From contig NW_027367053.1 in assembly GCF_046119375.1 (NCBI RefSeq), forward strand, positions 1 through 62,500: 62,500 nucleotides of DNA, in the 5' to 3' direction. Both the position numbers and the translations under genes were made by a program. The stretch's first letter is position 1; each line of letters begins with the position of its first letter. This document shows, one piece after another, positions 7,988 through 62,500 of the stretch. The notes below the pieces were generated by a model. It saw only the letters and a program-made list of their open reading frames with translations, was not told where the DNA came from and ran no database searches. The DNA is from Phyllobates terribilis. Taxonomy: Eukaryota.

Positions 7988-8155
7988 CTCCAGGATGCAT
8001 CTTGAAGGCATGAAACTCTCTTTGAAGATTGTACTTGCGATTGTTTTTCATGTCGTTGCTCCCTTTGTGGATGGAAAAGATGGCCGCCCAAATTTCCTTG
8101 GCAGTGGCTATGCTAATCACCTTGTCTATGTCAATCCGTGTGAGTCCAATGAGGA
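7985..8155 (-). pseudogene. About 170-bp fragment of family B gag
   Basis: Matches about 19455-19626 (DIDKVISIATAKE.W.AI.SIH.GS.DMKNNR), about 14 mismatches by eye. It is clearly more distant from the family A gag. Confidence 0.85.
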
Positions 8156-10052: not shown

Positions 10053-11417
10053 TGACAAGGCCAAAATGGTCGTTATGTTTGTCAAAATAATATTTATAAA
10101 ACCTCACTAACTTCTCTACAATTAGAGTGGTAAGCAAGGGTCGATCCCACAGGGAGTCAGGTATTCAATTCTTGTGTAATTAATAAGATCAAATTTATTA
10201 ATGATAAAAGGGGGAAATTGGATTGATGCTAAGTTACTAAATTAATCTAGGAAAGCAATAGAGAAAATACCTTATTCAGAGGGTATCCACACAACGGAAT
10301 GATTGGTTTGATCATAGACTTCCTAATTACTAATCAGGTTCATTCTATCAATTTACATATTACGATTGTCCTAATCCATTTACTAGAGTTGCTAATTAAG
10401 TCAACTAGTCCTAACAATGTCTTACCTACCAACCTAGCCTTGAAACTATCAAGACTAACTCCTAGGCAGCATTAAGTTCATGAATAGATAGGAAAGTGTA
10501 TTGCCCTTGGCGCCTATACCTCATTAATCTCCTCATCCTACAAGTCCAACTAGTCCAAGTAGATATTTGTGCCACTAAGTAGGCAATGTTCTCCAACTAG
10601 GATAAACCAGGGCCTAGCTATATGAAATAGATCTATAAACATAGGTGATCAATCTAGATAAACAAATTACAATACAAGCAAGAGATTAAAACAACTCAAA
10701 TAATATATTTTCATTAGAACCAAAGGAGAAAGTCTACAAATCAACCATCTGCATGCTTCAACCTGGAGAACAATGAAAACTCCCTCTATAAACTCTCTAA
10801 ATTAACCTAGAACTAAGCATGAGAAGGAGGCAAGATCTGCTCCCTTATTTATAGAAGAGAGAAACCCTAAAAACAACCTAAAGGGGCCCAAGCTCGTAGC
10901 CCAAGTAAAAGTAGGTAAAAAGGCCCAAAACAATCCTGCAAGAGAAGATCAATCCATGGCTGAAGACCCAGGGCGGTGCGATCGCGCTTCTAACGGAGCG
11001 GGCACGTCCGCCCCAGTGAGTAGGGCGCGGCCGCGTCCTAGCTTCTGCGGAATAGCAACGTCCATAAAATCGTCATAACTTTTGACTCACAAATCCTATT
11101 GCGCTCATATTTTCAAGTCTTCAAGTAAACTTCAATATCTAACTTCTCGAATTGGAATCATCTCAATCTGATATAGGATCAGGGAGAACGAGCCATCTGA
11201 ACTCATCTCAACATCTCAGCACTTCTTCTCGCGTGCGCGAACTTGCTTCGTACTTTGGCCGTTTCCTCTTAGGTATTCACCCAAATATTTGTATTCCTTG
11301 TGTTAACACCTTTTTCTCGTGAGGTCTGGAACACACTAATACGCTCAAAATCATGGCCAGTTTGTCTATGAACATGATAACGACCACCATTTATGCCGTA
11401 TTAAATGTCGCTCATCA
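10053..11417 (-). mobile_element. Solo LTR of a sister Athila-like subfamily (1365 bp)
   Basis: TG...CA termini and a perfect 5-bp TSD CTTAC at 10048-10052 and 11418-11422. Both ends resemble the neighbouring LTRs; the middle is divergent. Confidence 0.9.
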
Positions 11418-11494
11418 CTTACACAGTAGGATCTCATGCCTTGCCGCTTCCTAATCCTGTTGTCGTACCACCCTCTCTTCTTCTTCTTCCTAAT

Positions 11495-14400: not shown

Positions 14401-16425
14401 GATTATCATTAGGATGCATTAGGACCGATACCAAGATTGCATGTTCACCATCTCTTCTCTAGTTTGTCATTATGTCATAATATCTTGCTTCTGTCCATCT
14501 TCAATATGTGTAAAACGAAGACGGCCTGGACCATAAGATGAACGGGCCCATTACTTGAATAAATAATTTGATAAAATAAATTGGCCCGGACCGTAAAATG
14601 GACGGGCCCGATGCCTAAATACAAATTGGCCTGGACCATAAGACGGGCGGGCCCAGTGCTTAATAAGTAATTGTAGAGTAAGAAGTACATGAATAGGATT
14701 AAAAGGATCAATAAAAAGTGCATGTGATATGACTTGAGTTGAGTTGTGGTCTTTTGTTTGCTTTCGATGGTATTAAAGCGCGTGCATAATTATCATAGAA
14801 TATGAAGCATGCTAGGACGAGAATTAGTTGCTTATTTGATCTTCCGTTATTCGCATTTATATATTACTTGGATAGAGACATATTTAGAATAGTTTTAGGA
14901 TTCAGGTTAATGTACTCACGTTGACATAGCTCAAGTTTAGGGAATAATTGATGTCATTGTTGAGTCAGTTTAGAGTTTCATTAAGTCTTGTATTACCTTT
15001 GAGAATTTCTAGTAGAGTCGGAGTCTACGCCCATGCTTTTGATGATTTTAGGTACCGGGAGATAGAGTGTTGATCGACGACCACTTTAGTCATGTCTTCC
15101 ATACTCGCTAAGATAGACAAGTAATTAGCAGCAACTTATTTGAGGACGAGCAAGGTTTAAGTGTAGGGGTGTGATGAGCGGCATCTAGTATAGCGTAAAG
15201 AGTGGTTATTAGCATCATATATCGGCATATTGGCCATGTTTTAGAGCATATCACCGTAGTCTGGGCCTCACATAATAAAGTGATTAAACACGAGGATTAC
15301 AAGCATTTGGGAGAAGACCAAAGAGGAAACGGCCAAAGGACGAAGCACAAACGCGCACGCCAGAGGACGAATCCGCACCAAGGAAACCAGCCCAGGGCGC
15401 GACTGTGTCCTAGGTGACGCGACCACGCCAAGGTTCTACAAGGTAGCGTGACCACACCCACATTGGTGCGACCGTGCCCGTCTAGGGTTTGTGTTGCGTC
15501 TTCTTATTTTCTACGGGAGTTTTTGGGCTATTTTAACCTAGTTTGGAATGGAGTTTTGGGTTGGACTTTTGAGGGTTTACTCCTAGGGTTTTCTAGGCTT
15601 TGTAAATAAGGTTGAGATAGTTTCCTCATGCCCATCATCCATTATTATCATTTCAATTCGATTAGGTCTAGTTTACATAGAATGAGGAGCGAGTAGTCTC
15701 CTTAGCTTTGTTCTCCAGGTGGAAGCATGCGGAGATTGGTTTGTAAGATTTATACCCTAGTTCTATATAATATATTATTGTATTGTTTCATCTCTCTTGC
15801 TCTTGAATGATTACTGAATATGATTTATCTATCTAGATTAGCTACCTAGGTTGTTTAGATCTAGTTCAAATTGCTAGGTCTAATTTGTCCAAGTTGGAGA
15901 GTCTTACCATTTGGTAGCAAATCTAGGCTAGTTGAACTTGTGATTGTGTGGAGAATGATGATATGTTAGCAACCAAGTGGCACTACATGTTGCTATCTAT
16001 TCCTGAATGCATTGCTTTCTATTGATTAACTCTTGATAGTTTCAGGGTTGTATTTAGGTAAGGGTTAATAGGACCAGTTGGACTATTAACTACATTAGAA
16101 TAGGGATTAGGGAAACCATAATATATGAATTAGAGATTGAACCCGAATAGAAATTAGTAAGTCAATGATCAAACCAATCAATTTGTAGTGTGAATACCTA
16201 GTGAATAAAGTGTTTTCTAGTATTTGTTTCTTAGTTTAGTTTAGTTTAGTTTAGTTAGTTTCAATTACATTCCCTCTTTCTTTGTTACTTTCAAGTTAAT
16301 TAGATTAATTGCACAAGAATTTATCACTAGACTCCTTGTGGCATCGACCCTTGCTTGCCACTCTACTTGTACAGGAGCTAGTTAGGTATAAATATTACTT
16401 TGACGCGGATAAACGAAGCTCGTCA
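11495..16425 (+). mobile_element. Complete non-autonomous (LARD-like) Athila-derived element, 4.9 kb, inserted in inverted orientation into a copy of its own family
   Basis: 5' LTR 11495-12721, PBS TGGCGTCGTTGCCGAGGA at 12726-12743, PPT GTTTAAGTGTAGGGG before the 3' LTR (about 15172-16425). TSD CTAAT (11490-11494) / CTCAT (16426-16430). The internal region has only broken gag-like remnants and no RT, RNase H or integrase. Confidence 0.88.
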
Positions 16426-18656
16426 CTCATCTTGTGTGGCCTCTTTAGGTGATTTGTAGGATGAGGCACAGGTGCTTGGGACTCCAGAGTTCTCTCGGAT
16501 CAAGTAACTCTCCCTTATTGTCTAATGGTGGACCCGGATCATACTCATTGATGTTAAACAGTGGGGAGAAACCTTTGTGGAAAAATAGTTGCGAAGCAGG
16601 CGCGGGTACGCGGATATGGTGTGTGGGCATGCACATTGGCAGAGAGGAGGACGCGGGCGCGTATGTACGGGATGCAGTTGCGCATGGGATCAAGGGGCTC
16701 GGCTCGGGCATGCAATGGAGGGTGCGGTCATGCAAGGAGTTCCGAAAACAGCACCGTAAACGCGCGCTCGCGTGGCTCGAGTGCGTGGTCACACACGGCT
16801 GCAGGGCTGGTCACGTGGTCGTGTACGACTAAGGTGCGGTCGCGCACATCTTCAGTAGTGTTAGCACGGTCGTGTATCTCCAAGGGGTGGGCGCGAGGCT
16901 CTAGAGAGGTTGGCTTGTGTTCGCGCTCCTCGGGTTGTGGGTGCGTGTCTCTTGGTTCTTTAACCTCAATCTCCTCTTTATCAACTTGCATCTCCTCCAA
17001 GCCTTGATCGCTACTTGTTTCCACGTCTTTGACACTGATAACGCTTTGGTGGATTGCGATTTGATGTTGTAGCTCGGCATAATCTTGCAACTGAATAAAT
17101 ATGATTGTCGTATTTGCTTAATCCAGTATTCCATATAGTTAAAATGCTTGTTGAACATGCCACGGGCGCGGATCCCCACATCTTTCAACAGCGTTAACCA
17201 ACGTCTTGCTCAAGATTAGCCAACTGGTAAAGCGCGTCCTTGATTTCAGCCATTCCCTTGGTTCTCTTATTCCATTCTCCTTCTTTCTTGCAAGCTTATC
17301 ATGTAAACTCATCAGTAGCATGGGTGCTGCCAAACAATAGCCAGCACCAAAGTTAATCAAACGAAAAACACAAGAAACGAAGTTTAGACTCCCCAGCAAT
17401 AGTGCCAAATTTGATGAGCGACGTTTAGCCCTGTCAAAATAATAATTCCTAACTAACTACTCTAACTAGCAGAGTGGGAAGAAAGGGTTGATCCCACAGT
17501 GAATCGAGTATTGATTCTTGTGTATTTAATATAATTAACTCTAAAGTAATAAAAGGGGGGAGTAATTGAAACTAACTAACTAATTGATTGAAGGAAAGCA
17601 ATAGAGAAAATACCTTATTTAGCAGGTATCCACACAACGGAATGATTGGTTGATCATTAACTTCTTAATTACTATTCGGGTTCATCTTATATTTCATATA
17701 TTATGGTTGTCCTAATCCCTGTTCTTATATAGTTAATAGTCCAACTAGTCATAATAACCCTTACTCAACTACAACCCTGAAACTATCAAGATTTAAGAAT
17801 CAAGCAGCAATGAACTCAGGAATAAATAGGAACATGCGGTACCATTGGATCAAGGCCGATATTTAACACATCATCAACTCTCCCTACAATAACAATTCCA
17901 ACTGGGTCATGCATTGATTTGCTACCAAACGATAGGACTCTCCAACTCGGACAAGTCAAACCTAGCAATTTGAATAGATCTAAACAGCCTAGATAGCTAA
18001 GCTAGATAGATAAATCGCATTCAATAAAATCAATTAAGATCAAGATAGATGAAACAAATTCAATAATATAATTTAGAACCAAGATAGAAGTCTTATAAAC
18101 CAATCATTTGCATGCTTCAACCTGATGAACAAAGGAAGGAGACTATTGTTGCCTCATTCTAAACTACATAAACTAATGAATAATGGATAACAATGGATAG
18201 GAAGGAGGTAAATCTCTCAACCCTATTTATAAAATATAATAAGCCTAGAAACAACTCCTAAAAAGCCTAGCTCGAAACTCCACCCGAAACTAGGTAAAAA
18301 GGCTCGACGAATCTCGCAGCAAAGAAAAGGGTCGGCCACCAGCCCAGCCGGGCGCGAGCGCGCGCATCTGGGCACGAACGCGCCACCACGCAGGGCCTTG
18401 GTGCAGTCGTGCCACCTAGGATGCGGTCGCGTCACCTTGCAAGACCTAGGCGCGGCTGCGTCTTCATGTGTGAACGATCTTGCTTTGTCCTTTGGCCATT
18501 TTCTCTTCGTTCTTCTCCCAAATGTTTGTTATCCTTGTGTTTAACACCTTTTCTCTTCAAGGTTCAGAATGCAATTATATGCTCCAAATCATGGTCAATT
18601 CGCCTATAAATGATGTTAACGACCACTTGTTGTGGTGTACTAAACATCGCCAATCA

Positions 18657-19868
18657 CATAGTTATTAAGCTCAGTTCCCTAAATTTCTTAAGGTTTTTAT
18701 CGGAGAGCCTATTAGACAGATCTAAGCTTTCAATTATTAATCCCAAAACTTCTTCCTCATACTCAATATCTTGTTTTCCAAGAGTCTCTTTATCATCAAG
18801 TAAGCCTCTAATCATGTTAACAAGTTTGTCTTTACCTAGGATGTTAAGGCGGTTAACAAAAGTAAGTCGCTTCATCCGAATTTTCCATAAGGCACATGCC
18901 TTGGAAGCCTTCATGAAGATTAGATTCATCATCATCTTCTCCCCACACAAAAATAGAGTCTTTTGTTCAGCTGGTTCCACTTTGGCCTTAGTGCATGTCT
19001 TAGCGAGATGACCCTTCTCTTGGCAGTTGTAGCAAGTGTAGTCCTTGAGGTCTCTTTTGGAGGTTGAACCAGCAGCTTGTGAGTTTTTGTTCTTGAAGAA
19101 CTTCTTGACCATCGTTGTTATAAGGGAGATTTTCATATCTTCATCCTCATCATCACCCTCTTCATTTTCCATCTTTTCTAGGAATCTCGTGAGCTTTAAG
19201 CCAGTCCCTCTTGTTTCCTTGATCGCGCTACTTCTTTGATTGTCAACGGTTTCTTGATCAAAGAACTTCCCAAATATGTTCATTACTGGAAGGTTCTTCC
19301 TTTCGGCGGACATGAGAGCAATTCTTCTAGTCAGCTCATATTTCTCACTCATTCCATAGATGATCGCCATAGATTGTTCCCATTGAGGGATTTTGACTCC
19401 AGAGACACTTAGCTTATCCAATAGAATGGTGAATCTTGATTTGCATGCAGACGCGCTTTCTCCAGGAAGCATCTTGAAGGCATGAAACTCCCTTTGAAAA
19501 TTGAAATTGCGGTTGTTTTTCATGTCGTCGCTCCCTCTATGGATGGAAATGATGGCCTCCCACATTTCCTTGGCAGTGGCTATGCTAATCACCTTGTCTA
19601 TGTCAGTCTGTGTGAGTCCAATGAGGATGAGCTAGCGAGCCTTGGTGTTCTTCTCCATATTGATGAAGTGCTCGGGTGTCCATTCCTTTCTTTCCTTGAC
19701 ATTTGCAGGGATTTCCTCCTCACCGAGTTCAACGATCTTCTAGCATTGGTAGTATTGGGTTTAAATGTAGGTCGTGTGAACTCCCCACCACTAATCGAGT
19801 TCTCCATCTTGAAGTTGATGTGTCTTGTGGATGGAGACAACGGGGGTGAATTCTCTGGTCTTGGTCAT
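18657..19868 (-). pseudogene. copia gag (family B)
   Basis: 312-aa ORF with CCHC knuckle plus frameshifted N-terminal codons (KIVELGEEEIPANVKERKEW). It ends abruptly at the Athila LTR boundary. Confidence 0.85.
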
Positions 19869-38203: not shown

Positions 38204-39832
38204 GTGCAATGTAGCTTGTATTTAGGAATGACAAAAGATGAGGTGAAGATTTAACAACAAAAATATAGATTGCAGATTTGCAAGGTACCTTGACCTATGT
38301 TTTCACTCGTCTATCTGCCGTTTGTTAGTATGCTTGAATTGAGTGATTATGTTCTTTTTTCCACCTCTGCGTATTTTCACTTGAGATGGATGGGATTATC
38401 AGATTACGGATACCTGTATATATATTCATTGGAGATTGATTTGAACATGTATTTTACTTGAGACTGGTGGAAGCAGCATAATACTTTACAAAATTTTTAC
38501 TTGTTTTTGGGAAGTGCTTACTGATAACTCATAATTAACCTATGAAGCATGGACATATTTAGAAGAGGGTCGTGTTCGTGTTTGTGTCCGACATATCTAA
38601 AACACATGGACACACTTCATATACATCTTGGACACAATCGAAAACAGAACACACCGAAATCCGTTTGTCTTTAATTTTAAAGATCTAACTTATTTCCGTA
38701 GTATTCATATTTCAATGTAGAATAAAGTTGTTTCTTACTTTCCTTAAAAGGAAAAGCGGAAACAACTACACGAAATAGTCCCTAGAATGACAACTGAAAA
38801 AATATATAAAAGATCATTTGGCCTGTAGGCACCCATTTGACTTGATTTTACAGAATTTTGAATATATTTATAATTTGGATACTCAAAAGTCGACACAAAG
38901 ATGTGGTTTAATCTTAAAAGTGTTTTTCCTATAATGACAAAAAATAATTTAATTTTAATTTTTATTATTAGCAATTGAGTATCATAATTTTATCTCTTAC
39001 AAGGTTTGTTATATTATTTTTAGCAATATTTTTAAATTAACATAAATTATATCGTCGTGTCTTGTCGTGTCCTATTTCTCTATATTTTGGATTTGTCATG
39101 TCCTTCTGTCTTGCCATGTCCGTGTGCCCATATCCGTGTCCGTGCTATATAGGTCATAAGAGATGTTGGATTCAAACTCTAGACCTATGAGGGTGTATAA
39201 ATATTACCCTTACCACTAGGCTAGAGGCTCGTTGGCAAGTCATAACTAAACTTGAGTACATTTTGTTGAGTCTAATTTGAATATTCAACTCAATCTATTT
39301 ATATACTAAAGAAAGATCATTTTGTCTATATGCCATCATTGGTTTAAAACAATATATGTATTGATCTAGCATAAATCTCGCATATATCTAGTATTACTGG
39401 ATTTTTTAGGAAAAACAATCTATTTATTCTTAAAAGTTCATTTCACGATCATAACAGATATGAAGGGACGTCAAATCTAAGAAAATAAATTAACAATCTT
39501 CTAAAAAACGACGAAAAAATAAATTACACATAACACTTCTATATACCTTCATTTCAAGCTTCGTTGTACAGAAATCTACCGATTCAGACAAGTTTTAAGG
39601 AGGAAGTTCGATATCTGATTCACCAAGTTATAAATAAAATATAAATTATTATAAATCATTTGCATCTTTATTGATACACGATTCTATTTCACTACCCATA
39701 AAAGGGAAAACTACCCACAAATTAGGAGGCGGGATAGACTCTAAGAGCAGAATTTACTTGGGCCGGGCCAAAACAAGTCCAATGATAAGAGCCCAAGACT
39801 AAAAAACGCAAAGCTAATGTTGTGTATACTTC
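38204..39832 (+). repeat. Copy 1 of a 1.63-kb head-to-tail duplication of the RVE6-RPS10 spacer
   Basis: Colinear with 39836-39852 + 44802-46249 + 48485-48513 + about 50550-50685. Confidence 0.9.
38538..39154. mobile_element. MITE with GTGTCC/GGACAC subterminal repeats; also present in copy 2 at 45138-45750
   Basis: Imperfect TIR ACCTATGAAGCA(C/T)GGACA ... TGTCCGTGCTATATAGGT. No clean TSD was seen. It is present in both duplicate copies, so it predates the duplication. Confidence 0.65.
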
Positions 39833-44396: not shown

Positions 44397-46249
44397 GTGA
44401 AGGCAATGATGTTGGTGTAGATTAAATGTTGTATTGAATGTGCTTGGTGAGTTAGGGCTTTTTGGTTGGAGTTTTTGGATGTACAGCTATAGAAGATTTA
44501 ATGCTTCCAGCTGAAGTGAGAGTATAAATTTCTCAGTTTGTCATCTATACCTTGTACTGAATGTTCCTTTATTCCCTCAATCCATGGGATCTGTCATCCT
44601 TGATTCTTATTGGTTGTTGAAAAAACTCACTTGTATTGATTGGTTAATGAAAAGTAAGCAGATTTTGTGATTCACATTTACTTTGCTTTTTCTTTAATTT
44701 TCAGTTGTCAATCAACACATTAATGAGTCATAACTCATTAATGCTTCATTAAAAATTGTGTCCAACATCAAAACTAGAAAAACTATCTGGGACGGAGGGA
44801 GTATTTGGAAATGACAAAAGATGAGGTGAAGATTTAACAACAAAAATATAGATTGCAGATTTGCAGGGTAGCTTGACCTATGTTTTCACTCATCTATCTG
44901 TCGTTTGTTATTATGCTTGAATTGAGTGATTATGTTCTTTCTTCCACCTCTCATAAGCAATGCGTATTTTCACTTGAGATGGATGGATTATCAGATTACG
45001 GGTACCTGTATATATTCATTCGAGATTGATTTGAACATGTATTTTAACTGAGACTGGTGGAAGCAGCATAATACTTTACAAATTTTTTACTTGTTTTGGG
45101 GGAATCTTTTGAAGTGCTTACTTATGACTCATAATTAACCTATGAAGCACGGACACACTTAGAAGAGGGGCATGTATGTGTGTGTGTCCGACATATCTAG
45201 GACAAATGGACACACTTCAGATACATCTTAGTTATAACTGGACACACCTTGAACACACCCAAACCCGTTTGTCTTTAATTTTTAAAGATCTAACTTCTTT
45301 CTGTAGTATTCATATTTCAACGTAGAATTGAGTTGTTTCTTGCTTTCCTTAAAAGAAAAACCGGAAACAACTACACGAATAGTCCATAGAATGACAACGG
45401 AAAAAATATATAAAAGATCATTTGGCCATGCAGGAACCCATTTGACTTGATATATTTATAATCTGGATACTCAAAAGTCAACATAAAGATGTGATTTAAA
45501 TTTAAAAGTGTTTTTCTTATAATGGCCAAAAAATATTTATATTTGTTTTTTATTATTAATCATTTATATGTAATTGAGTATCATAATTTATCTCTTACAA
45601 GGTTTGATATATTATTTTTAGCGACATTATTCGAATAACATAAATTATATCGCCGTGTCATGTCGTGTCATATTTCTATATTTTGAATTTGTCTTGTATT
45701 TGTGTCTCATCATGTCCATGTCCTCATATCCGTGTCTGTGCTATATAGGTCATAAGAGATGCCGGATTCGAACTCTAGACCTATGAGAGTGTATAAATAC
45801 TACCTTTATCACTAGACTAGAGGCTAGTTGGCAAGTCATAACTAAACTTGAGTACATTTTGTTGAGTCTAATTTGAATATTCAACTCAACATGTTTATAT
45901 ACTAAAGAAAAATCATTTTGTCTATATGTCATCATTGGTTTTAAACAATACATGTATTGATCTAGCATTAATTTCGCATATATCTAGTATTACTGGATTT
46001 TTTTAGGAAAAACAATGTTATTAAGAAAAGTTTATTTCACAACCATACTAGATATTAAGGTACGTCAAATCTAAAAAATATATTAACAATCTTCTAAAAA
46101 AACAACGAAAAATATAAATTACACATAACACTTTTACACACCTTCGTTTCAATCTTCGTTGTACAAGAATCTATTAATTCACACAAATTTTAAAAAGGAA
46201 TTTCGATATCTGATTCGCCAAATTATAAATAAAATATAATTTATTATAA

Positions 46250-48475
46250 GGCGTTTTTGCACGAAACCACCCCTATACGGCTGAATTTGCAAGGAACCAC
46301 CCTCTATATCGCTAATTATTTCGAACCACCCAGATTTCAACATTTTTTTACCAAGAGCCACCCCTCCCTCAATTCCGTTAGGTTTTCCATCCAAATTACC
46401 TAAAAGACCAATTTGCCCTTGACAGAATTAAAAATTTACAGAAAAACCAAGGTTTTTTACTCTAAAAAAAGGTATTTAAAAAAATGAACAGTAGGAAAAA
46501 AATTCTCCTTCGTCTTCTTCGATCTTCATTTTCTCCTTCGTTCTTCATTCTTCTGCAAAGGTAAATCAATTTGTTTCCTTCGTTCTTCTTACTTTTCAGT
46601 GTTCATCTCCCAATTTTGCATCATTTGTTCTCCCAATATAGCATTGGTGAGTTTGCATCCTTCGTTCTTCTTACTTACTGTTTAATGTTCACCTCCCAAT
46701 TTTCTGGGCGAAAATGAATTAGGGTTCTTCTCGAAATTGAATCTCCATTGAATCTCGAAGGAGAAGAACCTGCCAATTTCCACGCTCAAAATCGAATCTC
46801 GCATACGAACCTGCCAATTTTTATCAGGCGTTTAAGTGTCCTCTTTTAATGACAAAATGCTTATCGTGCATGAAGAAAAAGCTAATATCATCTAACTACC
46901 AAGTAGTTTATATAAGACAGAGGATGATGAATTAGCTAGGATCAAAAGTATCCCAAAGAAACTGCAAACTAAGAAAGTAATAGAGTGTGGTCTAGTGATA
47001 TAACTTAGTTCATTCTAAACCAAAGTATCAGTAATGAATCATGAAATGCAGGGTACAAGGCAGGAAGTAATAGAGTACAAGAAGTTAGAGTTGGCATGAC
47101 CTTTGCATATAGCAAAGTATCATCAATGAATGCTTCCCATGTTTCTTCTCTAACCATCTGTAATGGAGGTGAAGACGGAGTTAATTTTACAACCATTTGT
47201 AGTTTCTATTACAAGCTTACATATACCAATTTGTCAAACGTACCAGCTTTTGTAGTTTCTTCACTTGTGTAAAATGGAAATTAAATAGAAATATGTGATT
47301 CTACATTAACTACCAAACCGATTCAAGATGAAAACAAATCCAATCCAATATAAATTATCATTAGCAATGTCGATTGCCTTCAAATTATTTGGTGTAAATA
47401 AACAGAAATGGCATACTTACAAATGAGATTATAAGAGATCTAGAGGATAACCTTGACTAAAGCGAAGACTGAAAAACGCAAGAATGACTTGAATCTCCTA
47501 CAACATAAAAAATAGAAATCAATGGCAAGATGAGCTAGAAAAAACTCAAATTGAACAAAGGCCAACCGAGTTAAGAAGATACCTAATAGAGAAGACGATG
47601 GTGGATAAAAGGAGAGAGAACGGAAGCGGCGGAGAAAGGGATGGGGAGGTAAGAGAAGAAGAGGAGGAAATGGAAGAGGTAGTGGGCTCGAAATCAAATC
47701 TCGCATACAAACATGCCAATTTTATGGGCGAAAATGAATTAGGGTTCTTCTCCTTCGTTCTTCTTCTTCTTCTTCGACCTTCCGATTTTCGTTCTTCTTC
47801 TTCTCCCTAATTCTCCATTCTTCTCCTTCGATTACCTAATTTGTTTTTCCAAATTCGATTCGAAATTTGCAGGGCTTTATGTTCGTATATTTGCAGGGGT
47901 TTATGTATTTCCAGGATTTGTGTTCGTATACATTCTGGGTTCGTATATTTGCAGGGATTATGTTCGAAATTGGGTGTTCAATGAACTATAGCTAGTGAGG
48001 TAACTTATTATCCTTGATTGGTATATTTGTCTTTTGCATAGTTGGTATATTCATGCGAGTGATTCACATGCGAGGAAGTATGCAAAAGCTATAAACGCGA
48101 CACTGTTCTTCTCAAGCTCTACATACAACATAAATGTGAACAAGGTGTTCAAAATCATAACAACAAAGCTATTCAACCTTCCATGGAGTGTAGAGCGCAA
48201 TTTGATAGTGGGGATGATAGGAAATACAGGAAAGTCACGGGGGAGCTTCTAATAACGAAGAGAAAGAATATTTAGAAGAAGGGTATTTGGGTTTTTTTTG
48301 AGATGTAGGGGTAAGATAGACATTTTATACATTTCAACAGAAATTGTAACGGAATCCGTCCAAGGGTGACTTTGGGTAAGAAAATGTTGAAATTTGATAG
48401 TTCGAAATAATTAGCAATATAGAGGATGGTTCCTTGAAATTCGGCCATATAAGGGGTGGTTCCGTGCAAAAAAAC
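46250..48475. mobile_element. Non-autonomous MULE (Mutator-like), 2.2 kb
   Basis: About 130-bp imperfect TIRs (TTTTTGCACG.AACCACCCCT...) and a perfect 9-bp TSD TTATTATAA at 46241-46249 and 48476-48484. No transposase was recognised. Confidence 0.9.
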
Positions 48476-52986: not shown

Positions 52987-53573
52987 ATGGTAAGCTTATG
53001 TCAAATAAGACTGTTTGTAGGAGGAAGTATATAGAATTTATTTACATGTGGTTAAAACGTATGTATATTATGTAGGCAAACGCTGCATCTGGAATGGCAG
53101 TTGAGGATGAGTGCAAGTTGAAGTTTCAAGAGCTAAAGGCGAAGAGGTCGTACCGTTTCATCACCTTCAAGATAGCGGATCAGCAGGTCGTGATCGACAA
53201 GGTGGGTGGGCCTGACGAGACCTACTCAGACTTCACCGACGCCCTTCCTCCTAACGAGTGTCGCTACGCCGTTTTCGACTTTGACTTCACCACCATTGAG
53301 AATGTCCAGAAGAGCAAGATCGTCTTCGTTGCATGGTAAGATCCCTAATCCTAATGCTAAAATGAGGTAACAACTCTTTAATTATAGTGATTTGTACATG
53401 ATAATGTTTGAAAATTGGAAAGGGCACCGGATACATCAGCAGTGAGGATGAAGATGGTGTACGCAAGCTCAAAAGACAGATTCAAGAGAGAACTCGACGG
53501 AATCCAGGTGGAGTTGCAGGCGACTGACCCCAGTGAGATGAGTCTCGACATTGTCAAATCCCGGGCCCATTGA
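52987..53573 (+). CDS. ADF7: Actin-depolymerizing factor, subclass II (ADF7/ADF10-like); exons 52987-52989, 53076-53335, 53423-53573
   Basis: [76 protein letters not shown]-only first exon. The subclass is assigned from recalled sequence. Confidence 0.9.
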
Positions 53574-54937: not shown

Positions 54938-56723
54938 TTACCTGACCGGTTGCTGGTTGTAGTGGTTCTTCTCTTTCTTCTTGGCGGCCGCTAGTCTTGC
55001 AGCCCTGGCTGCGGCCTCTTGAGCGGCGGCTTTGGCTGCTCCGTCCAAATCCTTGCCGGATTTCTTCTTCTTCATTGCCGCTATCTTCTTTAGACGCTCT
55101 TTCATGTCTTCTTCATTCAGCTCTCCATTGCCATCTGAACTGTTTGGCTGCTCCTCACTTTCTGTAACTTTAACTTCCTTTACAGACTTGTCTTTCTTCT
55201 TCTTCTTCTTTGCATTCTTCGACTCAGATGGAACACTCACCTTATCTCCATTACCGTTAGCCTCTTCTTTTTTCGCCTCACCCACTTCCTTCTCTTGTGC
55301 AACACCTGCTTGTGAAATCGTCATCATCAGAGTTTTAAGGGTTTAGATCAACTGAGAGGATGTATTGCCATATCATTAAATTCATTCTTAATCTATCTAT
55401 ATAATAGTAAAACAACATGAGAAACAGCCTATGTGTCAGTCTCATTGATTTGTGTCAAATTTAAGAGTAATGTTATACTATAACCACATTGCATCCAATG
55501 TGGCATAAGTTATACACATTTCCTTTAATATTATATGACTAGGATACACTAATTTAATAAAAGGAAACAATGTTACTTAGAGAACCTTTTAGTCTATAAG
55601 AGAAAGAAGTAGAATTCAACATTATCTTTTATATTTGAATATAAAGATATCCTATAAAGAAAAATAGGAAATGACTAAAATATAGAATACACAAAATCGC
55701 AATTACAGGGAGAGTATTATATTAAACACAATCGTTATTTATTATTTATGAGAAAGATAATTACTTATATTGTGATTCAATATGATATATTTAATTATAA
55801 TATATCTACAAAATATTATTTTAAATATAAAAATATAGAATAAATCACATGCATGGCACACAGGCTAAACTAGTTAGAAGCTAATTTAAGATGGTCATCT
55901 ACAGATAAAAAGTTAGGAATTCCTGAGAGTAAGTAGGTTAAAGAAGAGGAGGTCAGGATTTACTTACTCTGGACATCACTCTCCTTTGGGGTAACTCCGA
56001 AATCAGCTAGGAGAGCATCGAGTTCCTCCAGCTCCTTCTTCTTGCGTTCCTTCCTTGATAATTGTCTCTCTGTTTCTTTCACTGGTACAGAAGTTTCAGG
56101 CAACTTGTTTGCAAGTGGTTCAGGATGAATAACCTCTTGTTCCTGTTCATGCTCATCCTCAACATCCTCATCACCTAAATCAAGCATGTCGTCTTCACTT
56201 TCACTCTCCTGTAAAGTGGGACGATAGCGAATAAATGCAATTAACATCCAAACTTCATGCACTGAAATTTCTGATACATAATTTTGACTCACAAAGATGC
56301 CATTAGACAATCAATGAATGCTCCAATATGAGGAGACGGACTCAAGTAAAAGCTCACTGACCAAAAACAATCAAGCATAAAAATTGGTGAATAAGCAAAT
56401 TCATCACCAACCTCTGCTGCATCTACGACATCCTTGCTCCCCTGAGCATCATGAGTACTCCAAACAGCCTGAGGAGGCGCTGTTGTAGCATAGTAATCGT
56501 CATCATCTTCATCATCCACATCAGCCCATGATTTTGAAGTTAATGGAGTAGGAGCCCAGAATACATGGGGCTCTGGCTCCTTGGCTGGGGCTTTTGAAGA
56601 GCCCTTGCTCTTCTTTTCCTTGTCTGACTTCTTCTTCTTACGCAGAGACTCGAGAGCTGAGAAAACGTTGTTGTTGCTGATAGTAAAAGCGCCTTCATCC
56701 CTTCTCATACTACTTCCCACCAT
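54938..56723 (-). CDS. Conserved plant acidic/Lys-rich protein of unknown function (from memory resembles Arabidopsis At4g32610/At2g25670); exons 56723-56412, 56208-55968, 55305-54938
   Basis: Motifs RRDEG, FWAPTPL.SKSWAD.DD.DDDYYATTAPPQ, ERQLSRKERKKKEL.EL.ALLADFGV and AAAKKKEKNHYNQQPVR*. GT-AG junctions keep the frame. There is a probable 5'-UTR intron up to about 57022. Confidence 0.88.
55392..55873 (+). mobile_element. Small non-autonomous Helitron (482 bp) in intron 2 of the minus-strand gene
   Basis: A|TCTATCTATATAATAG start and CTAG|T end, with a decayed hairpin CACATGCATGGCACACAGG just upstream. Confidence 0.8.
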
Positions 56724-57084
56724 CTCCAAAGTAAATCCGATACAACACCAGCTGATTCAACAATGAAAGCTACGAGATAACAGGATACCAAATTGTATCA
56801 GTAAAGCATGTGAATTTGGGATAGGACTCATCCAGTAAAGACAATTCGAATAATCCTATAAACTAGAGCAACACAAGCATATACCTTGTCAGAACCTACA
56901 CTCAGATTTCTCCAAACAGGACCCCTAGATCAGATATAAAGTCTCAATCGAGTGATAAATAGTTCAAATAACATGAAACTATTAGAAAACTGTGGAGAAC
57001 TCGAACGAAAGAACAGAACTGACCTTTTGCCCGGGAGAATTCGATTAGCTCGACGATATATCAAACAATCCAAAACAAGATTGA

Positions 57085-57177
57085 TTTAGGGTTTTGATAT
57101 ATCAATAAATTCGCAAAAGAAGAGGTAGAAGAGAGGACAGCGAGGATAGGAGAGGAGGGGAGCGAGTCTAGGGTTTG
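57085..57177 (-). promoter_or_regulatory. Two telo-boxes near the 5' end of the minus-strand gene
   Basis: TAGGGTTT (AAACCCTA on the minus strand) at about 57087 and about 57169. Confidence 0.55.
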
Positions 57178-58374
57178 TAATGGATAATCTGGGTATGGAA
57201 GAAAGATAATAGAGAGTTATGGCCTTTGGGAATGGATTTTCTGGTTGCAGGAGAGGAAACTGAGGATGTCAAAAGCCAAATTTTATACTCTGCAATCTGT
57301 GTCGTATGACGTTTTTTTAATTTTGGTCTATGGTCATTTTACAAACGGGTCGGGTCGTTTCAGTGTATTTATAATGTCTAATCTAAGGTCACCTTACATA
57401 CGGGTCTTTTTTTTTTTTAAATGTTGTACACTATACGTACCGTATTTAGCAAACCATGTTTTATGTGACACTAAAAAAAGACTCTCTAAAATCTAAAAAC
57501 TAAACACTCTCAAGTGGCAAAAAAAAAAACCTCCTCTGTAAACTTCTCTTTCATCATACCGCCGCTTCGTTCATCTCTTCCCTTATGAGTCTCTCTCTTC
57601 CCCGATCTTGTACCCTTATGAGATCTCCCGTCCTGGGTGTTTTAACTTGGTTGTCTGCCCCTTAGCCACTGTTTTGTTTTCTTCCCCTGCCTCCCTGTCA
57701 CATGTCTCATGATGTCCGACGGATTTGTGATGGGTGTTGGTAGAGTATGGGGGGTACTGTGCTGCGGAGTGATTAGTCTGAGCTCTGTATGTGCGTCTGG
57801 AGTACGGAGCCTTCTTTTGTTCACCTACTTAAAAGAAATTCTTTTGTTCTTCAGCGGGAGAGGGGTGTGCGGCTTTTCCGGGTCTCCCCAATCTGCCTGA
57901 ACGTGGAACTATTCTGACGTTAAGGATGGTGTTGGTTGCTCCATTCACTGTGCCTCTTCTCTCTGTGCGCAGCTCTGGTATCAGAGTGTGACTCTTCCCA
58001 GATTTCTCGGAGATCTTTGGGTCGTTTTAGATTTTGTTACTTCTCAGATCTGCTTGAACAGGTTTACCTATCTCCTCTCTTTTTCTTCTAAGCTATGCGT
58101 GAATAAATGGACTTTACATCCGACCTGCTATAAATATGTTGAGAGTTACCCCTTTGTCTTGTATGTTTTACCTACTAAATCTAAAAAGCATTGTGAGTTT
58201 TCCTACTGGCTTGACTTGGTGTTTGTTGCTCTTTGTGAGTTGTTGTGGTGGTGCTTGTTGTGGTCTGACATGGACAAAAGAAAGTAAAAAGTTGGTAGCC
58301 CAGGTACACTCTTATCAGAACATGCTCAGATCAATCTCAGTTTTGCTAAAGCTGGATTGGAGAAAAACAAGAAA

Positions 58375-60543
58375 ATGAATAAATCACAAAACTTACCAAA
58401 TCTCACTCCACTTTCAAGTGGATCCCAACAAAAAGGAAAAGCTAAGAAGGGGGTGGTTCTACTCCCTTCTTTGACCTAACTGACATGTTTAACAAGCTGG
58501 CTACAACTAGGGAAAATGGAAGAAAGAGGAAACTCTTGACATTGGTGGGTTTTCTTGTGGGGGAACCTAAAGAGTTTCCAAGACTGTTTGCCAAAATGAG
58601 AATGGAATGAAAACCTCTAAAAGGAACTTTGGGCTTCACCATCCTGAAAAAGGGCTGGTTTGAGATTGCATTCTCAAACCAAGCAGATTTTGAATTAATA
58701 TGGAAGAATAGACCCTATCATTTTTTAGTCAACTCTTGTTGATTAAACAGTGGTACCCGAGGTTTGATCCTACAACTGAGTCTATATCAAAACTGGATCT
58801 ATGGGCTAGGCTCCACTATCTTCCTGAGGAGTTTGCCAATGCGGGCGCCCTTGAAACTATAATTGAGGGTTGTCTTATTGGCAAATTCCTCCGTATGACC
58901 CATAATAGTGAGAGATGGAACATGTTTACGAGATTCTGTATTCATACAGATATTGAAAAAAATGTTAGGAAAAAGCATAATTGTCCCTGATGAGCATTTT
59001 AACCAAATCCGATATTCCCTTTTGTTTGATGATTTCTCTGCGGGTTGTGGTGCATGTGGGAAGCTTTCCCATGTGTACAAAGACTGCCCTAATAAGAGTG
59101 CGGCTTTTCCAACTCTCAATCTCACTCTGAAAAAACCTTCCTCGAAAATTGCTGGCTCGGGCTGTGATGAGGGGGACTCCTCTGCAGCGGGGGCATGGAA
59201 CTATGTTGGAAAGAATAATAAAATCAATAACGGTGGGTCTGAATTTCCTTTCCCCGTTAGTAACAAATACCTTACGAGCAAAGGTGGAATTAAAATCACT
59301 TATGAGTCGGAAGACTCGGATGAATTCATCAACCAATTCATCATGAACGAAGAATCTTTTGTGGAAGCTCCTTCCCTTGTGGCTATGGCAGGTGTGTGGT
59401 CTTATGTACCAAATCTTTTTAACAAAATTTATAATCTGAATTGGTGCTTTCTAATCTATCCTTTCTTATTTGGCTCTGATCTGTTTATCTTCCTCTGCTT
59501 AGATGGTCTGAATTTATCTGGGACTAAGGATGAGATTAAACCGGTTGAACAGGAAAGTGATAAAGGTTGGTCAATATCCCTTCACTGCTATCAATTTTTT
59601 GTTTTGTTATTCTAGTTTGAAAGCATTTTTCTAGTATGGTGTATTTGGACTTTGGCATGTGTGCTCTGGCTCCTCAGTTTTGGATCTGTGATACAGGTGA
59701 GGTTCAGAATGGAAAACCGAATGATGGAAGTTTTTTTGACTGAATTCTGGCTCCTGGTGTTTTATGCAACATGAGCTGTTTTTAAGAACTCTCCATCTTT
59801 GTTATACTGGATTAACCTCCTAAATGACTTCTATGAACCAGGTAGTTTTGAAGCTTCGTCTAACAGAAGGGGCAATATGGAAAAGACCAATGAAACTTCA
59901 GTCCAGGGTTGTGCCAACTCTCCTGTATTGTGTTTTGCTGGTCTCAGCATGTTTCTGTCAAAAGTTTACCAACTTATTTCTTTCATTTGTGGTCTTTGTG
60001 CTGGTTTTTAGGGACTCAGCTGATTGACCCTCAACCTGTGACTAATGAAACCGCTGCTCATGTGGAACCTCCAACAAATATTGATCTAGATGCTAGCATG
60101 ACCTTGGATTTACATAGGAAAGCTGAAATGGAGTATAGTAATGAAATTGATGAAGTCCTATTCAAGATGATGAATTCGATGATCTCCTTATGGATGATAT
60201 GCTTGAGCTGGAACAAGGTGTGGAATTGGATGACAAGGTTCAAGAGAAGACTAAGGATCCTGTGTTAATTAGTAATGACCCTCCGTACACTGATCTGGAA
60301 CTTGAGGAATTTATTAGAAACGAACAAGTGGGAAAAGGTGTGGTTGGTTTGTTCAACGAGGCGTCGTTTCGCTCAGCTGAAAATTCCTTTAATTCGTCCA
60401 CTTCGGTTTTGGTGAAACTTGGCAAACTTGATGTGGATAATGAAATCCCGACTAAGACCACGTCTAGCAAACGAAAATTTAAGGAAGGTATGGAGGACAT
60501 CGCCTCTTCTGCTCCGTTGGAGGGTAAGAAAACCAAGGTGTAG
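58375..60543 (+). pseudogene. L1 ORF1 (DUF4283 + CX2CX4HX4C) with an apparently spliced acidic C-terminus; several frameshifts and one stop
   Basis: GWFEIAF..D..IWKNRPYHF..LLIKQW.P.FDP..LWARLHYLPEEF, RFCIHTDI and CGACGKLSHVYKDC. Candidate introns at 59392-59502, 59566-59696, 59730-59841 and 59908-60011. Confidence 0.8.
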
Positions 60544-61370
60544 CAACTTTGACTATGGTAGTTAAATGATTAGTCTTGGAATTTCTATTTTGGTGGAAAT
60601 CATAATATTCGTATATTGTGATTTTCCGATTTCCTTTCTGTCTTTGTTTTTAGCCTTTGTGTGGCCCTGTACGGTTGTTACTAAGTTATCCGTGAATTCT
60701 GGGACTAATCGGACTTGTAATAGTGTGCTTAGCAAATGTAAAATCTGGTGGATTCTGATCCTTTTGTACCTTCCCTTGTGGATTAATAATATGTTGGCTT
60801 TTTCTACCTTCGGATCCCCTCTTATGATGCAATGTTTTGTTGGGTTTTGAGGTCTCTGTTTGTTTGGAATGATGGAATGGTCCTGCTGGGCCTATCTGCT
60901 TCTGGCCTGTTTCAAAAATCAAATATAACCAATTGTTTGCTTCTTGTTTCTTGTATTCTCGGCCCCTGCTGGTTTTTGGTTGGATGGTGATGGGTTGATT
61001 CTTCCTGGTTGAGTTGGAATGAGGGTTGTGGATATCAAATGGGTAAAAGGAAAATCATTATGTTCTCATGGTGTCATCATTTAAAAGGGGATGATCTGTG
61101 GAATCATGTTCTCTATGGAAAAACAACTAAGAGAAGTATTAGAATGTGTGCTAAGATTCAAAAAAGCGTTGATAAGACTTACAAGAACATAAGATCAAAT
61201 AAAATGAAAACTATTTTTAATAAGCAAATTTTAGAATGGTCCGGTGTTTGATTTAAAGGATTTTTCTGCAAAAATAAGATGAGTCTGAAACACTAGCTAA
61301 TATTAAAAAAGAAAATCCGTTACAATCATAAAGCTAATAAAGGAATAACTCTCGGTATATGGGTGTTTAA

Positions 61371-62500
61371 ATGAAGATTGGCCTATGGAATTGTCGAGGT
61401 ATTGGTAGGAAGAATCTTTGGACTGAAATTGAGGCTCTTTGTAAAATTAATAGAATTAATATGATTGCCTTAGTAGAAACTAAATCGGAACCTGGACCCT
61501 CTAAAAACGTGTGGCGTAAAGCTGGTTTTGACAATTGTCATGTTATCCCTTCCTCTGGGTTGTCTGGTGAAATTTGTCTTCTATGGAAAAGTTATCAAAT
61601 GACTGATGAAACATGTGAGATTATTGTCTCGACTAATAGATTTGTGGCAGTTAAATATAAGATTTTTAGCCTAGACATTAATATGATGCTTGTTTTTGCC
61701 TATGGTCCTCCTGGTGAGGCTGGAAAAACGATTTCTGGTTGGAAATTACCAATTTTATAAGTTCATGCCCGGTCCCTTGTCTGGTGATGGGGGATTTTAA
61801 TGAAATTTCCTCGCCTGATGATAAAGCTGGGGGTGTCTCCCCAGCAAGTTCTAGATTTGTTAGATTGAATAATTTCAAAAACATCTGTGAATTGTCGGAA
61901 ATTCCATGCTCTGGTAATAGATTTACATGGAGAAAGAATAGGACAGAAATCTCAAACATATATGAAAAGTTAGATCGTACTTTGGTACAATCTGAATTCT
62001 TGCAGTGGTTCCCTGACATATCTACTCATAATTTTGCTTTCTCGTCCTCAGACCATTGTCTGATTACAACAACTCTAATGAACAACATTTCGAATAAAGC
62101 TCAACCTTTCAAATTTGAAAACATCTGGACTGAGAGGAAGGATTTTGAGAATCTTGTTCGTCAAGCGTGGCGTTGTGATGTGCCGAGTTCGCTTATGTTT
62201 AAACTAGTTAAGAAAACGGCTCTGGTCAAAGTTGCTGCGAAAAAATGGAATAAAACAACTTTTGGGAACATATTAAGACAATTGGAAGAAATTGAAATTA
62301 AGCTCACTAATGTTCAGAAAGAGATTCTTTCTAACCCTTCTCCAAGCTTTGTTTCTCTCCAAGAAAAGCTTATCAATAAAAAAGAGTGTCTGCGCTTTTC
62401 ATAAAAAATACTGGAATCAGAGAGCAAAAGTGAAACATATTAAACTTATTGATTCCAACTCCAAATACTTTCATAAGGTTGCGTCTGGCAGAAGAAATAG
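61371..62500 (+). pseudogene. L1 ORF2 N-terminus (AP endonuclease), frameshifted; runs off the window
   Basis: LWNCRG, IALVETK, GLSGEICLLWK, CLVMGDFNEI, GNRFTW, EKLDR, SDHC, FKFENIW and YWNQRAK..KYFHK. Frameshifts near 61730 and 62400. Confidence 0.93.

What the first reader, a model, noticed from the sequence alone, without database searches (positions are those of the whole stretch)
59340..60200. L1 LINE ORF1 apparently interrupted by four phase-1 spliceosomal introns
Seen: after the zinc knuckle, four T-rich GT...AG segments (59392-59502, 111 nt; 59566-59696, 131 nt; 59730-59841, 112 nt; 59908-60011, 104 nt) alternate with purine-rich mini-exons of 63, 33 and 66 nt. All eight junctions are phase 1. 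Splicing gives one continuous hydrophilic frame (..VAMA-DGLNLSGTKDEIKPVEQESDK-GEVQNGKPNDG-SSFEASS..ETSVQ-GTQLIDPQP..). After one -1 slip near 60160 it joins the terminal ORF 60190-60543. Unspliced, the frame becomes hydrophobic and stops at 59615. Established: LINEs copy through RNA, so introns are normally purged; intron retention is known in Penelope-like and Ogre elements. Inference: this lineage may use a spliced mRNA for ORF1p and an unspliced RNA as template, with symmetric exons allowing modular ORF1p isoforms. The third donor (A|GTTTTT) is weak, and this copy is decayed.
Basis: partly seen in the sequence, partly recalled or inferred. Interest (0 to 1): 0.82.

Follow-up and report, generated by a model that had tools for sequence, protein, structure and literature searches.

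The report
Intron-like blocks inside a plant LINE
A multi-copy plant jumping gene (L1-type LINE) has the tail of its first gene cut up by four short T-rich GT...AG blocks that look like real introns and are kept in sister copies; whether they are spliced could not be tested because no RNA data were available.

Summary
At 59392-59502, 59566-59696, 59730-59841 and 59908-60011 there are four T-rich (40-47% T) GT...AG blocks. They separate purine-rich pieces of 63, 33 and 66 nt, and all junctions are phase 1. Removing the blocks gives one open hydrophilic frame. Block-preserving shuffles give such a solution in 0-0.2% (within 6 nt) to 1.5-2.8% (within 10 nt) of trials.

The host element is a decayed plant L1-type LINE with a DUF4283 domain and CCHC knuckle in ORF1 and an endonuclease ORF2 from 61371. 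DNA contigs of the source sample show the whole stretch 57500-61300 at about 7-30 times single-copy depth. Sister contigs run colinearly through block 1, mini-exon 2 and block 2. No abundant block-less copy was listed. The frame break near 60163 coincides with a one-letter length difference from about half of the sisters. The 117-aa tail is conserved at 36-38% identity in two plant-derived metagenome contigs, which also show phase-1 GT-AG exon edges.

Best reading (about 0.5): true spliceosomal introns kept because unspliced RNA is the copying template. Against it: no RNA evidence, weak donors (none has A at +3), and the same composition in the element's own untranslated parts. If true, it is a new variant of a known kind.

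The parts
57590..58374 (+). Probable 5' untranslated region of the LINE. It includes a T-rich block at 57900-58260.
   Evidence: Depth in the source run rises from 3.7 to 27-37 at about 57500. A unique contig with 0 differences ends at 57615. Composition is T 0.40, A 0.18.
58375..59391 (+). ORF1 first part, decayed: DUF4283 domain (about 58611-58987) and CCHC knuckle (59046-59087), then an acidic linker.
   Evidence: Pfam DUF4283 scores E=8.1e-8, 32.5 bits, above the cut-off of 27.2. The CX2CX4HX4C motif is read directly. There is one in-frame stop and at least two frame changes. Sister contigs differ in length at 58448, 58720/58723 and 58956/58962.
59392..59502 (+). Intron-like block 1: 111 nt, CAG|GTGTGT...GCTTAG|A, phase 1, open in frame if retained.
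   Evidence: Sister contigs are colinear across it (records 4, 5, 10).
59503..59565 (+). Mini-exon 2, 63 nt, purine-rich.
   Evidence: At 59552 all listed sister contigs of the source run differ from the window, at a third codon position without changing the amino acid.
59566..59696 (+). Intron-like block 2: 131 nt, AAG|GTTGGT...ATACAG|G, phase 1. It holds the stop at 59615.
   Evidence: A host-gene intron in the same window uses the same GTTGGT donor.
59697..59729 (+). Mini-exon 3, 33 nt.
   Evidence: It is open in two frames.
59730..59841 (+). Intron-like block 3: 112 nt, GAA|GTTTTT...AACCAG|G, phase 1. This is the weakest donor and has a weak pyrimidine tract.
   Evidence: Sister depth is lowest in this bin (26.6 in the source run, 0.73 in organism C).
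59842..59907 (+). Mini-exon 4, 66 nt.
59908..60011 (+). Intron-like block 4: 104 nt, AGG|GTTGTG...TTTTAG|G, phase 1.
60012..60543 (+). Last ORF1 exon, an acidic tail module with a frame break at about 60163. The 117-aa ORF 60190-60543 is conserved in two other plant-derived contigs.
   Evidence: There is a one-letter length difference at 60163/60165 in roughly 40-50% of sister depth.
60544..61370 (+). Inter-ORF spacer: a T-rich half (60544-61010) and an A-rich half (61011-61370). A strong donor-like site AGG|GTAAGA lies at 60523/60524, in phase 1, just before the ORF1 stop.
   Evidence: Overlapping sister contigs chain from 60223 to 61330.
61371..62500 (+). Start of ORF2 (apurinic-type endonuclease). 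There is a frame change near 61740-61760, and it runs off the window.
   Evidence: Exo_endo_phos E=0.018, below the cut-off. One search gave hits up to 66% identity, one of them carrying PF14529. Depth is 450-765.

Best explanation
The four T-rich GT...AG blocks are spliceosomal introns inside ORF1 of a plant L1-type LINE family. Shown: the blocks and mini-exons exist as described. They are part of a repeated element, and sister copies keep them. Inferred: a spliced transcript encodes a long ORF1 protein (DUF4283, CCHC knuckle, acidic tail). Genomic copies descend from unspliced transcripts, which still encode a truncated knuckle-bearing ORF1 and an intact ORF2. The weak donors would keep splicing partial, as in retroviruses and in the plant retroelements Ogre and Copia.
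For: - **Composition:** T-rich blocks alternate with purine-rich pieces, and GT and AG sit within about 10 nt of every transition found from composition alone.
- **Frame:** removing the blocks gives one open frame, and the only remaining lesion is a frame break that lies where about half of the sister contigs differ in length by one letter.
- **Chance:** shuffles rarely reproduce the pattern, 0-0.2% within 6 nt and 1.5-2.8% within 10 nt.
- **Splice-site context:** G at -1 in 3 of 4 donors, YAG at all four acceptors, and G after 3 of 4 acceptors.
- **Host precedent:** a host-gene intron in the same window has the same make-up (T 0.42, A 0.23) and a GAG|GTTGGT donor.
- **Copy number:** the region is at about 7-20 times single-copy depth, and sister contigs at 82-96% identity are colinear through block 1, mini-exon 2 and block 2.
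- **Conserved tail:** the tail downstream of the blocks is conserved at 36-38% identity in two contigs from other plants, so it is coding and needs a way to be expressed. Those contigs also show GT-AG-bounded, phase 1-1 exons of 180 and 210 nt.
- **Substitutions:** 5 of the 9 sister differences listed in the coding pieces are synonymous (my codon count).
Against: - No RNA evidence at all: no RNA run was listed, and the four runs laid behave as DNA.
- None of the four donors has A at +3, and donor 3 has A at -1. Three of the four host donors I could model in the window are GTAAG.
- The blocks have the same T-rich, A-poor make-up as the element's own 5'UTR block and spacer, so T-richness may simply mark non-coding LINE sequence.
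- A spliced RNA would still carry ORF2 and should be copied in cis, yet no joint at any block border is among the listed joints (the list is truncated).
- Block 1 is open in frame, and the unspliced frame has only 3 stops in 224 codons.
- Conservation of GT/AG among sisters could not be read.
- The intron-like positions in the two distant relatives are mostly not the same as here.
Confidence: 0.5

Rival explanations
1. There is no splicing. The T-rich blocks are ordinary non-coding filler of this LINE family, like its 5'UTR and spacer. ORF1p ends soon after the knuckle. The purine-rich pieces and the tail ORF are a separate downstream cistron or the relic of one.
For: The blocks have the same composition as 57900-58260 and 60544-61010. 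All four donors are weak. Sister copies keep the blocks, and no block-less copies were listed. No expressed spliced protein exists in 1.8 billion representative proteins.
Against: It does not explain why GT and AG sit at all eight transitions in compatible phase. It does not explain why three short purine-rich pieces stay open in the joined frame. It also does not explain how the conserved tail would be translated from an internal position with stops in all frames upstream.
Confidence: 0.25
2. The tail region is a captured piece of unspliced host pre-mRNA or genomic DNA. Its introns are fossils of the donor gene and may or may not still be spliced.
For: The blocks resemble a neighbouring host intron in composition and donor type. 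The exon-intron mosaic is gene-like. The distant relative L001 shows an exon flanked by very AT-rich sequence.
Against: The tail has no relative among annotated plant proteins. The only hits were two short ORFs on metagenome contigs and one weak hit to a repeat in a 1279-aa protein whose C-terminus looks Ulp1-protease-like by eye. Feature-based neighbours are unnamed plant proteins and zf-CCHC_4/DUF4283 proteins, which is only a lead. The tail is followed by a T-rich spacer in L002 as well.
Confidence: 0.1
3. In intact copies the whole stretch is one unspliced ORF that alternates hydrophobic and acidic segments. The window copy has simply decayed.
For: Block 1 is 111 nt and open in frame. Blocks 2 and 3 together are 243 nt, so mini-exons 2 and 4 are in frame even unspliced. 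There are only 3 stops in 224 codons against about 7 expected. One sister contig aligns over 308 nt without gaps. The N-terminal part of ORF1 shows a similar lesion density.
Against: It needs about five lesions where the splicing model needs one. No well-supported length difference from sisters is listed inside 59392-60011, while the one at 60163 is. The translations of the blocks are typical of T-rich non-coding DNA (F, L, C, W runs). The GT/AG placement is left to chance.
Confidence: 0.07
4. It is a chance pattern picked out of a decayed repeat.
For: The scan examined very many windows. With a 10-nt tolerance, 12 alternative GT-AG solutions exist.
Against: The composition mosaic is strong and independent of the GT/AG choice. 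The shuffles give at most 2.8%. Splice-site context is better than composition predicts at the exon -1, acceptor -3 and +1 positions.
Confidence: 0.05

Closest known systems
Plant L1-clade LINEs with a DUF4283 / zf-CCHC ORF1 (Ivancevic et al. 2016, PMC5203782)
   Same: DUF4283 followed by a CCHC knuckle in ORF1, an endonuclease-first ORF2, and many copies.
   Different: That paper's text contains no occurrence of the word 'intron'. Here the ORF1 tail is broken by four intron-like blocks, and ORF1 and ORF2 are about 830 nt apart.
Ogre LTR retrotransposons of legumes (Steinbauerova et al. 2008, cited in PMC4659654; the paper itself is not held)
   Same: A plant retroelement that keeps an intron in its genomic copies and whose transcripts are spliced (per the paper's title). 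That splicing is partial and joins coding regions is my recollection.
   Different: Ogre is an LTR element with one intron between gag-pro and RT. Here it is a LINE with four short phase-1 introns inside ORF1, and splicing is unproven.
Ty1/Copia shGAG splicing in Arabidopsis (Oberlin et al. 2017, PMC5580714)
   Same: Splicing is part of a plant retroelement's gene-expression strategy (title and abstract). That it makes a structural-protein mRNA while unspliced RNA is the template is my recollection.
   Different: Copia splicing removes pol to raise Gag output. Here splicing would be needed to complete the ORF1 protein itself.
Human L1 splicing and SpIREs (Larson et al. 2018, PMC5860796)
   Same: Splice sites inside a LINE's 5'UTR and ORF1, and spliced RNAs that can be copied back into the genome.
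   Different: In human L1, splicing is harmful and SpIREs are dead ends (abstract). Here the spliced form would be the only one with a complete ORF1, and no spliced genomic copies were seen.
Penelope-like elements that retain introns (Arkhipova et al. 2003; from memory, not checked here)
   Same: Retroelements whose genomic copies keep spliceosomal introns.
   Different: A different class (GIY-YIG endonuclease, telomerase-like RT), found in animals, with a different mechanism of retention.

Membership tests
Plant L1-type LINE | ORF1 with a DUF4283 domain | tested here: met
   PF14111 scores E=8.1e-8, 32.5 bits, above the cut-off of 27.2, for 58736-58987. A weaker piece lies at 58611-58742.
Plant L1-type LINE | CCHC zinc knuckle after DUF4283 | tested here: inconclusive
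   The CX2CX4HX4C motif is visible at 59046-59087, but Pfam gave no zf-CCHC hit for 58908-59391.
Plant L1-type LINE | ORF2 starting with an apurinic-type endonuclease, followed by reverse transcriptase | tested here: inconclusive
   Exo_endo_phos and Exo_endo_phos_2 hit only below their cut-offs (E=0.018 and 0.075). Relatives at 42-66% identity were found, one carrying PF14529. The RT lies beyond the window end.
Plant L1-type LINE | Dispersed multi-copy family | tested here: met
   Depth is 27-765 against 3.7 for single-copy flanks in the source run, with sister contigs at 80-96% identity.
Plant L1-type LINE | Poly(A) or 3' tail and target-site duplication | not testable with these tools
   The 3' end lies outside the window.
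U2-type spliceosomal intron | GT...AG termini, length above about 70 nt, U-rich relative to the flanking exons | tested here: met
   Lengths are 104-131 nt. T is 0.40-0.47 against 0.18-0.25 in the mini-exons.
U2-type spliceosomal intron | Consensus context at donor and acceptor | tested here: inconclusive
   G at -1 in 3 of 4 donors, YAG at 4 of 4 acceptors, and G at +1 after 3 of 4 acceptors. No donor has A at +3 (GTG, GTT, GTT, GTT), and donor 3 has A at -1. One modelled host intron in the window also uses GTTGGT.
U2-type spliceosomal intron | Removal restores a continuous reading frame | tested here: met
   Shuffle control.
U2-type spliceosomal intron | Removed from RNA (junction reads) | not testable with these tools
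   No RNA run was listed. The runs found and laid are DNA.
U2-type spliceosomal intron | Splice sites conserved among copies while interiors drift | not testable with these tools
   Read laying shows only the best-supported 40 of 1766 differences. No sister DNA could be fetched.
Intron-retaining retroelement (Ogre-like strategy) | Intron present in genomic copies | tested here: met
   Three sister contigs are colinear over 59345-59665 with 0-2 gaps. Depth stays at or above 7 times single copy across all blocks.
Intron-retaining retroelement (Ogre-like strategy) | Both spliced and unspliced transcripts exist | not testable with these tools
   No RNA data.
SpIRE-like spliced genomic copies | Genomic copies lacking exactly the intron | tested here: inconclusive
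   No joint at a block border is among the 15 listed of 100 joints, whose support goes down to about 14. Rare copies, or ones hard to lay across 33-66-nt exons, are not excluded.

The most novel reading that the evidence does not exclude
A plant LINE family needs removal of four (perhaps six) short phase-1 introns to make its full ORF1 protein. It nevertheless propagates from intron-retaining RNA. Weak splice sites would balance the two RNA fates, and the introns might also help the element's transcripts look like host genes to the plant's RNA-silencing surveillance.
Probability: 0.4. Interest if true: 0.8.

Novelty: new variant of a known kind. Interest (0 to 1): 0.55.

Why it matters
LINEs are copied from their own mRNA, so real introns should be lost at each round, and in human L1 splicing is a dead end. 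A LINE family that keeps several introns inside ORF1 would show that non-LTR elements can also split their RNA into a spliced messenger pool and an unspliced template pool, as retroviruses do and as reported for Ogre and Copia. It would raise a testable question about cis-preference: why is the spliced, ORF2-bearing RNA not copied? It would also warn annotators that ORF-only searches miss the true ORF1 of such elements. If the blocks are not spliced, the finding reduces to an unusual T-rich/purine-rich mosaic in a decayed repeat.

Tried and rejected
- **RNA evidence:** The look-up of sequencing runs with kind rna listed nothing. A second search on the neighbouring host genes gave 13 runs, and the four I laid all behaved as DNA.
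- **Sister or related DNA:**
  - There is no other copy in the window.
  - An exhaustive representative search with the tail ORF gave only 3 weak hits.
  - A word-index search with the knuckle piece gave none.
  - The 3-sequence profile gave the same two hits.
  - The ORF2 piece gave 4 hits, all on contigs of about 1 kb.
  - Two metagenome scans confirmed nothing.
  - The contigs of P0002 and P0003 are only 667 and 1041 nt long.
- **Tandem-duplication origin of the exon-intron units:** rejected. TRF found nothing, and the four blocks align no better than random T-rich DNA.
- **Host-gene origin of the tail:** no annotated relative was found. Pfam finds nothing in the tail.
- **Earlier notes of this scan:** nothing near the window and nothing by sequence.
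- **Literature:** no report of an intron-bearing plant LINE turned up in the held library. This is absence in a limited library, not proof of novelty.
- **Splice-site scoring:** I did not score the sites with a position-weight matrix, because I had no verified plant matrix and would have had to type one from memory.

Full report
**What is there.** Positions 57.5-62.5 kb of the window hold one decayed plant L1-type LINE on the + strand.

- ORF1 starts near 58375. It carries a DUF4283 domain (Pfam E=8.1e-8, above the curated cut-off) and a visible CX2CX4HX4C knuckle at 59046-59087.
- An endonuclease-like ORF2 starts at 61371 and runs off the window.
- DUF4283 with a CCHC knuckle is the usual ORF1 of plant L1 elements (PMC5203782).
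- The neighbours are ordinary plant genes:
  - An actin-depolymerising-factor gene lies at 52987-53573, with two 77-78-nt introns.
  - A lysine/glutamate-rich gene lies on the minus strand at 54938-56722.

**The observation.** It is correct in every detail.

- The four segments are 111, 131, 112 and 104 nt. They begin with GT, end with AG, and hold 40-47% T.
- The pieces between them are 63, 33 and 66 nt and are purine-rich.
- All junctions are phase 1. Joining the pieces gives one open hydrophilic frame from the knuckle to about 60160.
- Unspliced, the frame stops at 59615.
- The terminal 117-aa ORF (60190-60543) is one frame off.
- A segmentation that uses composition only puts all eight transitions within about 10 nt of the proposed sites.
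- Shuffle controls, with the chance of a GT-AG set that keeps the frame open:

  | What was shuffled | Within 6 nt of the borders | Within 10 nt |
  |---|---|---|
  | Blocks only | 2 of 1000 | 28 of 1000 |
  | Blocks and mini-exons | 0 of 1000 | 15 of 1000 |

- The block borders used in the shuffles were taken from the GT/AG sites themselves. The scan also read very many windows. These numbers are therefore supportive, not decisive.
- The four blocks are not repeats of each other.

**Is it part of the element?** Yes. I laid Logan contigs of four DNA runs on 55900-61890 at 80% likeness.

- In the run that holds 99% of the neighbouring host-gene stretch (X1, probably the source sample), the unique flank has depth 3.7.
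- A perfect contig ends at 57615. From about 57500 the depth is 27-37.

  | Region | Depth in X1 |
  |---|---|
  | DUF4283/knuckle region | 107-237 |
  | Bins holding the four blocks | 27-83 |
  | Tail | 78-111 |
  | Spacer | 30-63 |
  | ORF2 | above 450 |

- Three sister contigs run colinearly through block 1, mini-exon 2 and most of block 2:
  - 59352-59665, with 52 differences and 2 gaps;
  - 59354-59661, with 55 differences and 0 gaps;
  - 59345-59601, with 10 differences and 1 gap.
- Overlapping sister contigs chain the tail to the spacer up to 61330.
- The intron-like blocks are therefore inherited by copies of a family with roughly 7-20 members at this likeness.
- A second organism (C) has the family too. 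A third (B) shares only the conserved DUF4283/knuckle and endonuclease parts.
- The well-supported length differences between the window and its sisters fall where this copy's frame breaks: 58448, 58720/58723, 58956/58962 and 60163/60165. The last one is carried by roughly 40-50% of the sister depth.
- No well-supported length difference is listed inside 59392-60011. No joint at any block border appears among the listed joints. Both tables are truncated to the best-supported entries.

**Is the tail coding?** An exhaustive search of 1.8 billion representative proteins with the 117-aa ORF gave only three hits.

- Two hits are short ORFs on plant-like metagenome contigs: L001 (667 nt) and L002 (1041 nt).
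- They share 36-38% identity and motifs such as DPPY(S/T)D.ELEEFI, F.S..NS..SS and SSKRK...G.ED.ASS.
- The tail is therefore a conserved protein module. It is absent from annotated plant proteomes, which fits a transposon-borne origin rather than a captured host gene.
- In both relatives the homologous coding pieces are bounded by AG| and |GT in phase 1, and their lengths are multiples of 3:
  - L002 has an exon at 207-386 (180 nt), followed by a 111-nt GTATCT...TTTTAG block.
  - L001 has an exon at 138-347 (210 nt).
- The positions of these edges mostly differ from those in the window. I identified them by eye.

**For introns.**

- The mosaic of composition.
- GT/AG at every transition in compatible phase.
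- G at -1 in three donors, YAG at all acceptors, and G after three of them.
- Lengths typical of short plant introns.
- A host intron 3 kb away with the same composition (T 0.42, A 0.23) and a GAG|GTTGGT donor like that of block 2.
- A conserved tail that cannot otherwise be reached by translation.
- Parsimony: the splicing model needs one lesion in about 1.1 kb of exon, and that lesion is visible as a sister difference. A continuous unspliced ORF needs about five.
- Of the nine sister differences listed in the coding pieces, five are synonymous by my codon count, including the one in mini-exon 2. This is a small sample.

**Against introns.**

- There is no RNA evidence. None could be listed, and no longer or spliced protein carrying this tail module was found among the 1.8 billion representatives.
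- None of the four donors has A at +3, and donor 3 is GAA|GTTTTT. Three of the four host donors I could model are GTAAG.
- The blocks have the same T-rich, A-poor make-up as the element's own 5'UTR block (57900-58260) and the first half of the spacer (60544-61010). Either those are introns too or T-richness just marks non-coding sequence of this family. A strong AGG|GTAAGA site in phase 1 sits at 60523/60524.
- A spliced RNA would still carry ORF2 and should be copied, as human SpIREs are (PMC5860796). Yet no abundant block-less copies were seen.
- Block 1 is open in frame, and the unspliced frame has only 3 stops in 224 codons against about 7 expected from composition.

**Verdict.** The feature is real, belongs to a LINE family and is non-random. 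I put about 0.5 on true, probably partial, splicing with an unspliced template.

| Reading | Probability |
|---|---|
| True, probably partial, splicing with an unspliced template | about 0.5 |
| Unspliced non-coding filler with a separate or relic tail cistron | about 0.25 |
| Captured gene fragment with fossil introns | about 0.1 |
| Continuous ORF that decayed | about 0.07 |
| Chance | about 0.05 |

The closest known systems are Ogre, Copia shGAG splicing, intron-retaining Penelope-like elements and human L1 splicing/SpIREs. A LINE needing several introns removed to complete ORF1 would be a new variant of that kind. I found no such report in the held literature.

I describe where this copy is broken and how the sisters differ.

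Noticed in passing
whole window (e.g. 52987-53573, 54938-56722, 58375-62500): The window is plainly plant DNA: a plant-type ADF gene, a DUF4283 LINE and T-rich short introns. Earlier notes filed under the 'same genome' speak mostly of a frog (CR1, DIRS, a frog retrovirus) and of a few plant Mutator elements. The piece may be a plant contaminant scaffold in an animal assembly, or the notes' grouping may mix sources.
   Followed up: partly
52987-53573 (+): An actin-depolymerising-factor gene with a one-codon first exon and introns of 77 and 78 nt (both GTAAG donors, about 72% A+T).
   Followed up: partly
54938-56722 (-): A lysine/glutamate-rich host gene. Its first intron (56411-56209, 203 nt) is T-rich and A-poor with a GAG|GTTGGT donor, like the LINE blocks. 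The bins at 56300-56700 have depth 58-656 in the runs of organisms B and C, but single-copy depth in the source run.
   Followed up: partly
60523-61013 (+): A near-consensus donor AGG|GTAAGA in phase 1 lies seven codons (counting the split one) before the ORF1 stop. It is followed by a 467-nt T-rich stretch and a possible acceptor at 61012-61013. This could be a fifth intron that shortens the unusually long (about 830 nt) ORF1-ORF2 spacer.
   Followed up: no
57900-58260 (+): A T-rich block in the LINE's 5'UTR with the same composition as the ORF1 blocks. A 5'UTR intron is possible, but no clean GT-AG pair sits at its edges.
   Followed up: no
P0001 (protein hit): A 1279-aa protein has three internal repeats weakly similar to the LINE tail module (E=1e-6). 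By my reading of its sequence (not tested), its C-terminus looks like a Ulp1-type protease. The tail motif may be shared between transposon classes.
   Followed up: no
L002:600-720: The distant relative L002 carries an internal duplication of a stretch around GATGATCCAGCTCCT. This shifts the frame just before its tail module, so that copy is broken as well.
   Followed up: no
100-1010 vs 6784-7694; 38218-39661 vs 44801-46256: Two pairs of long direct repeats (84-95% identical by segment) lie about 6.6-6.7 kb apart. They look like the LTRs of two LTR retrotransposons.
   Followed up: no
8100-19700: A dense nest of direct and inverted repeats (families D1, D3, D5, D7, D9, D10; I1-I22) suggests several copies of one element in both orientations.
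   Followed up: no
61732-61760 (+): ORF2 changes frame in this copy near 61740-61760. A minority of sister contigs differ in length by one letter at 61732.
   Followed up: no
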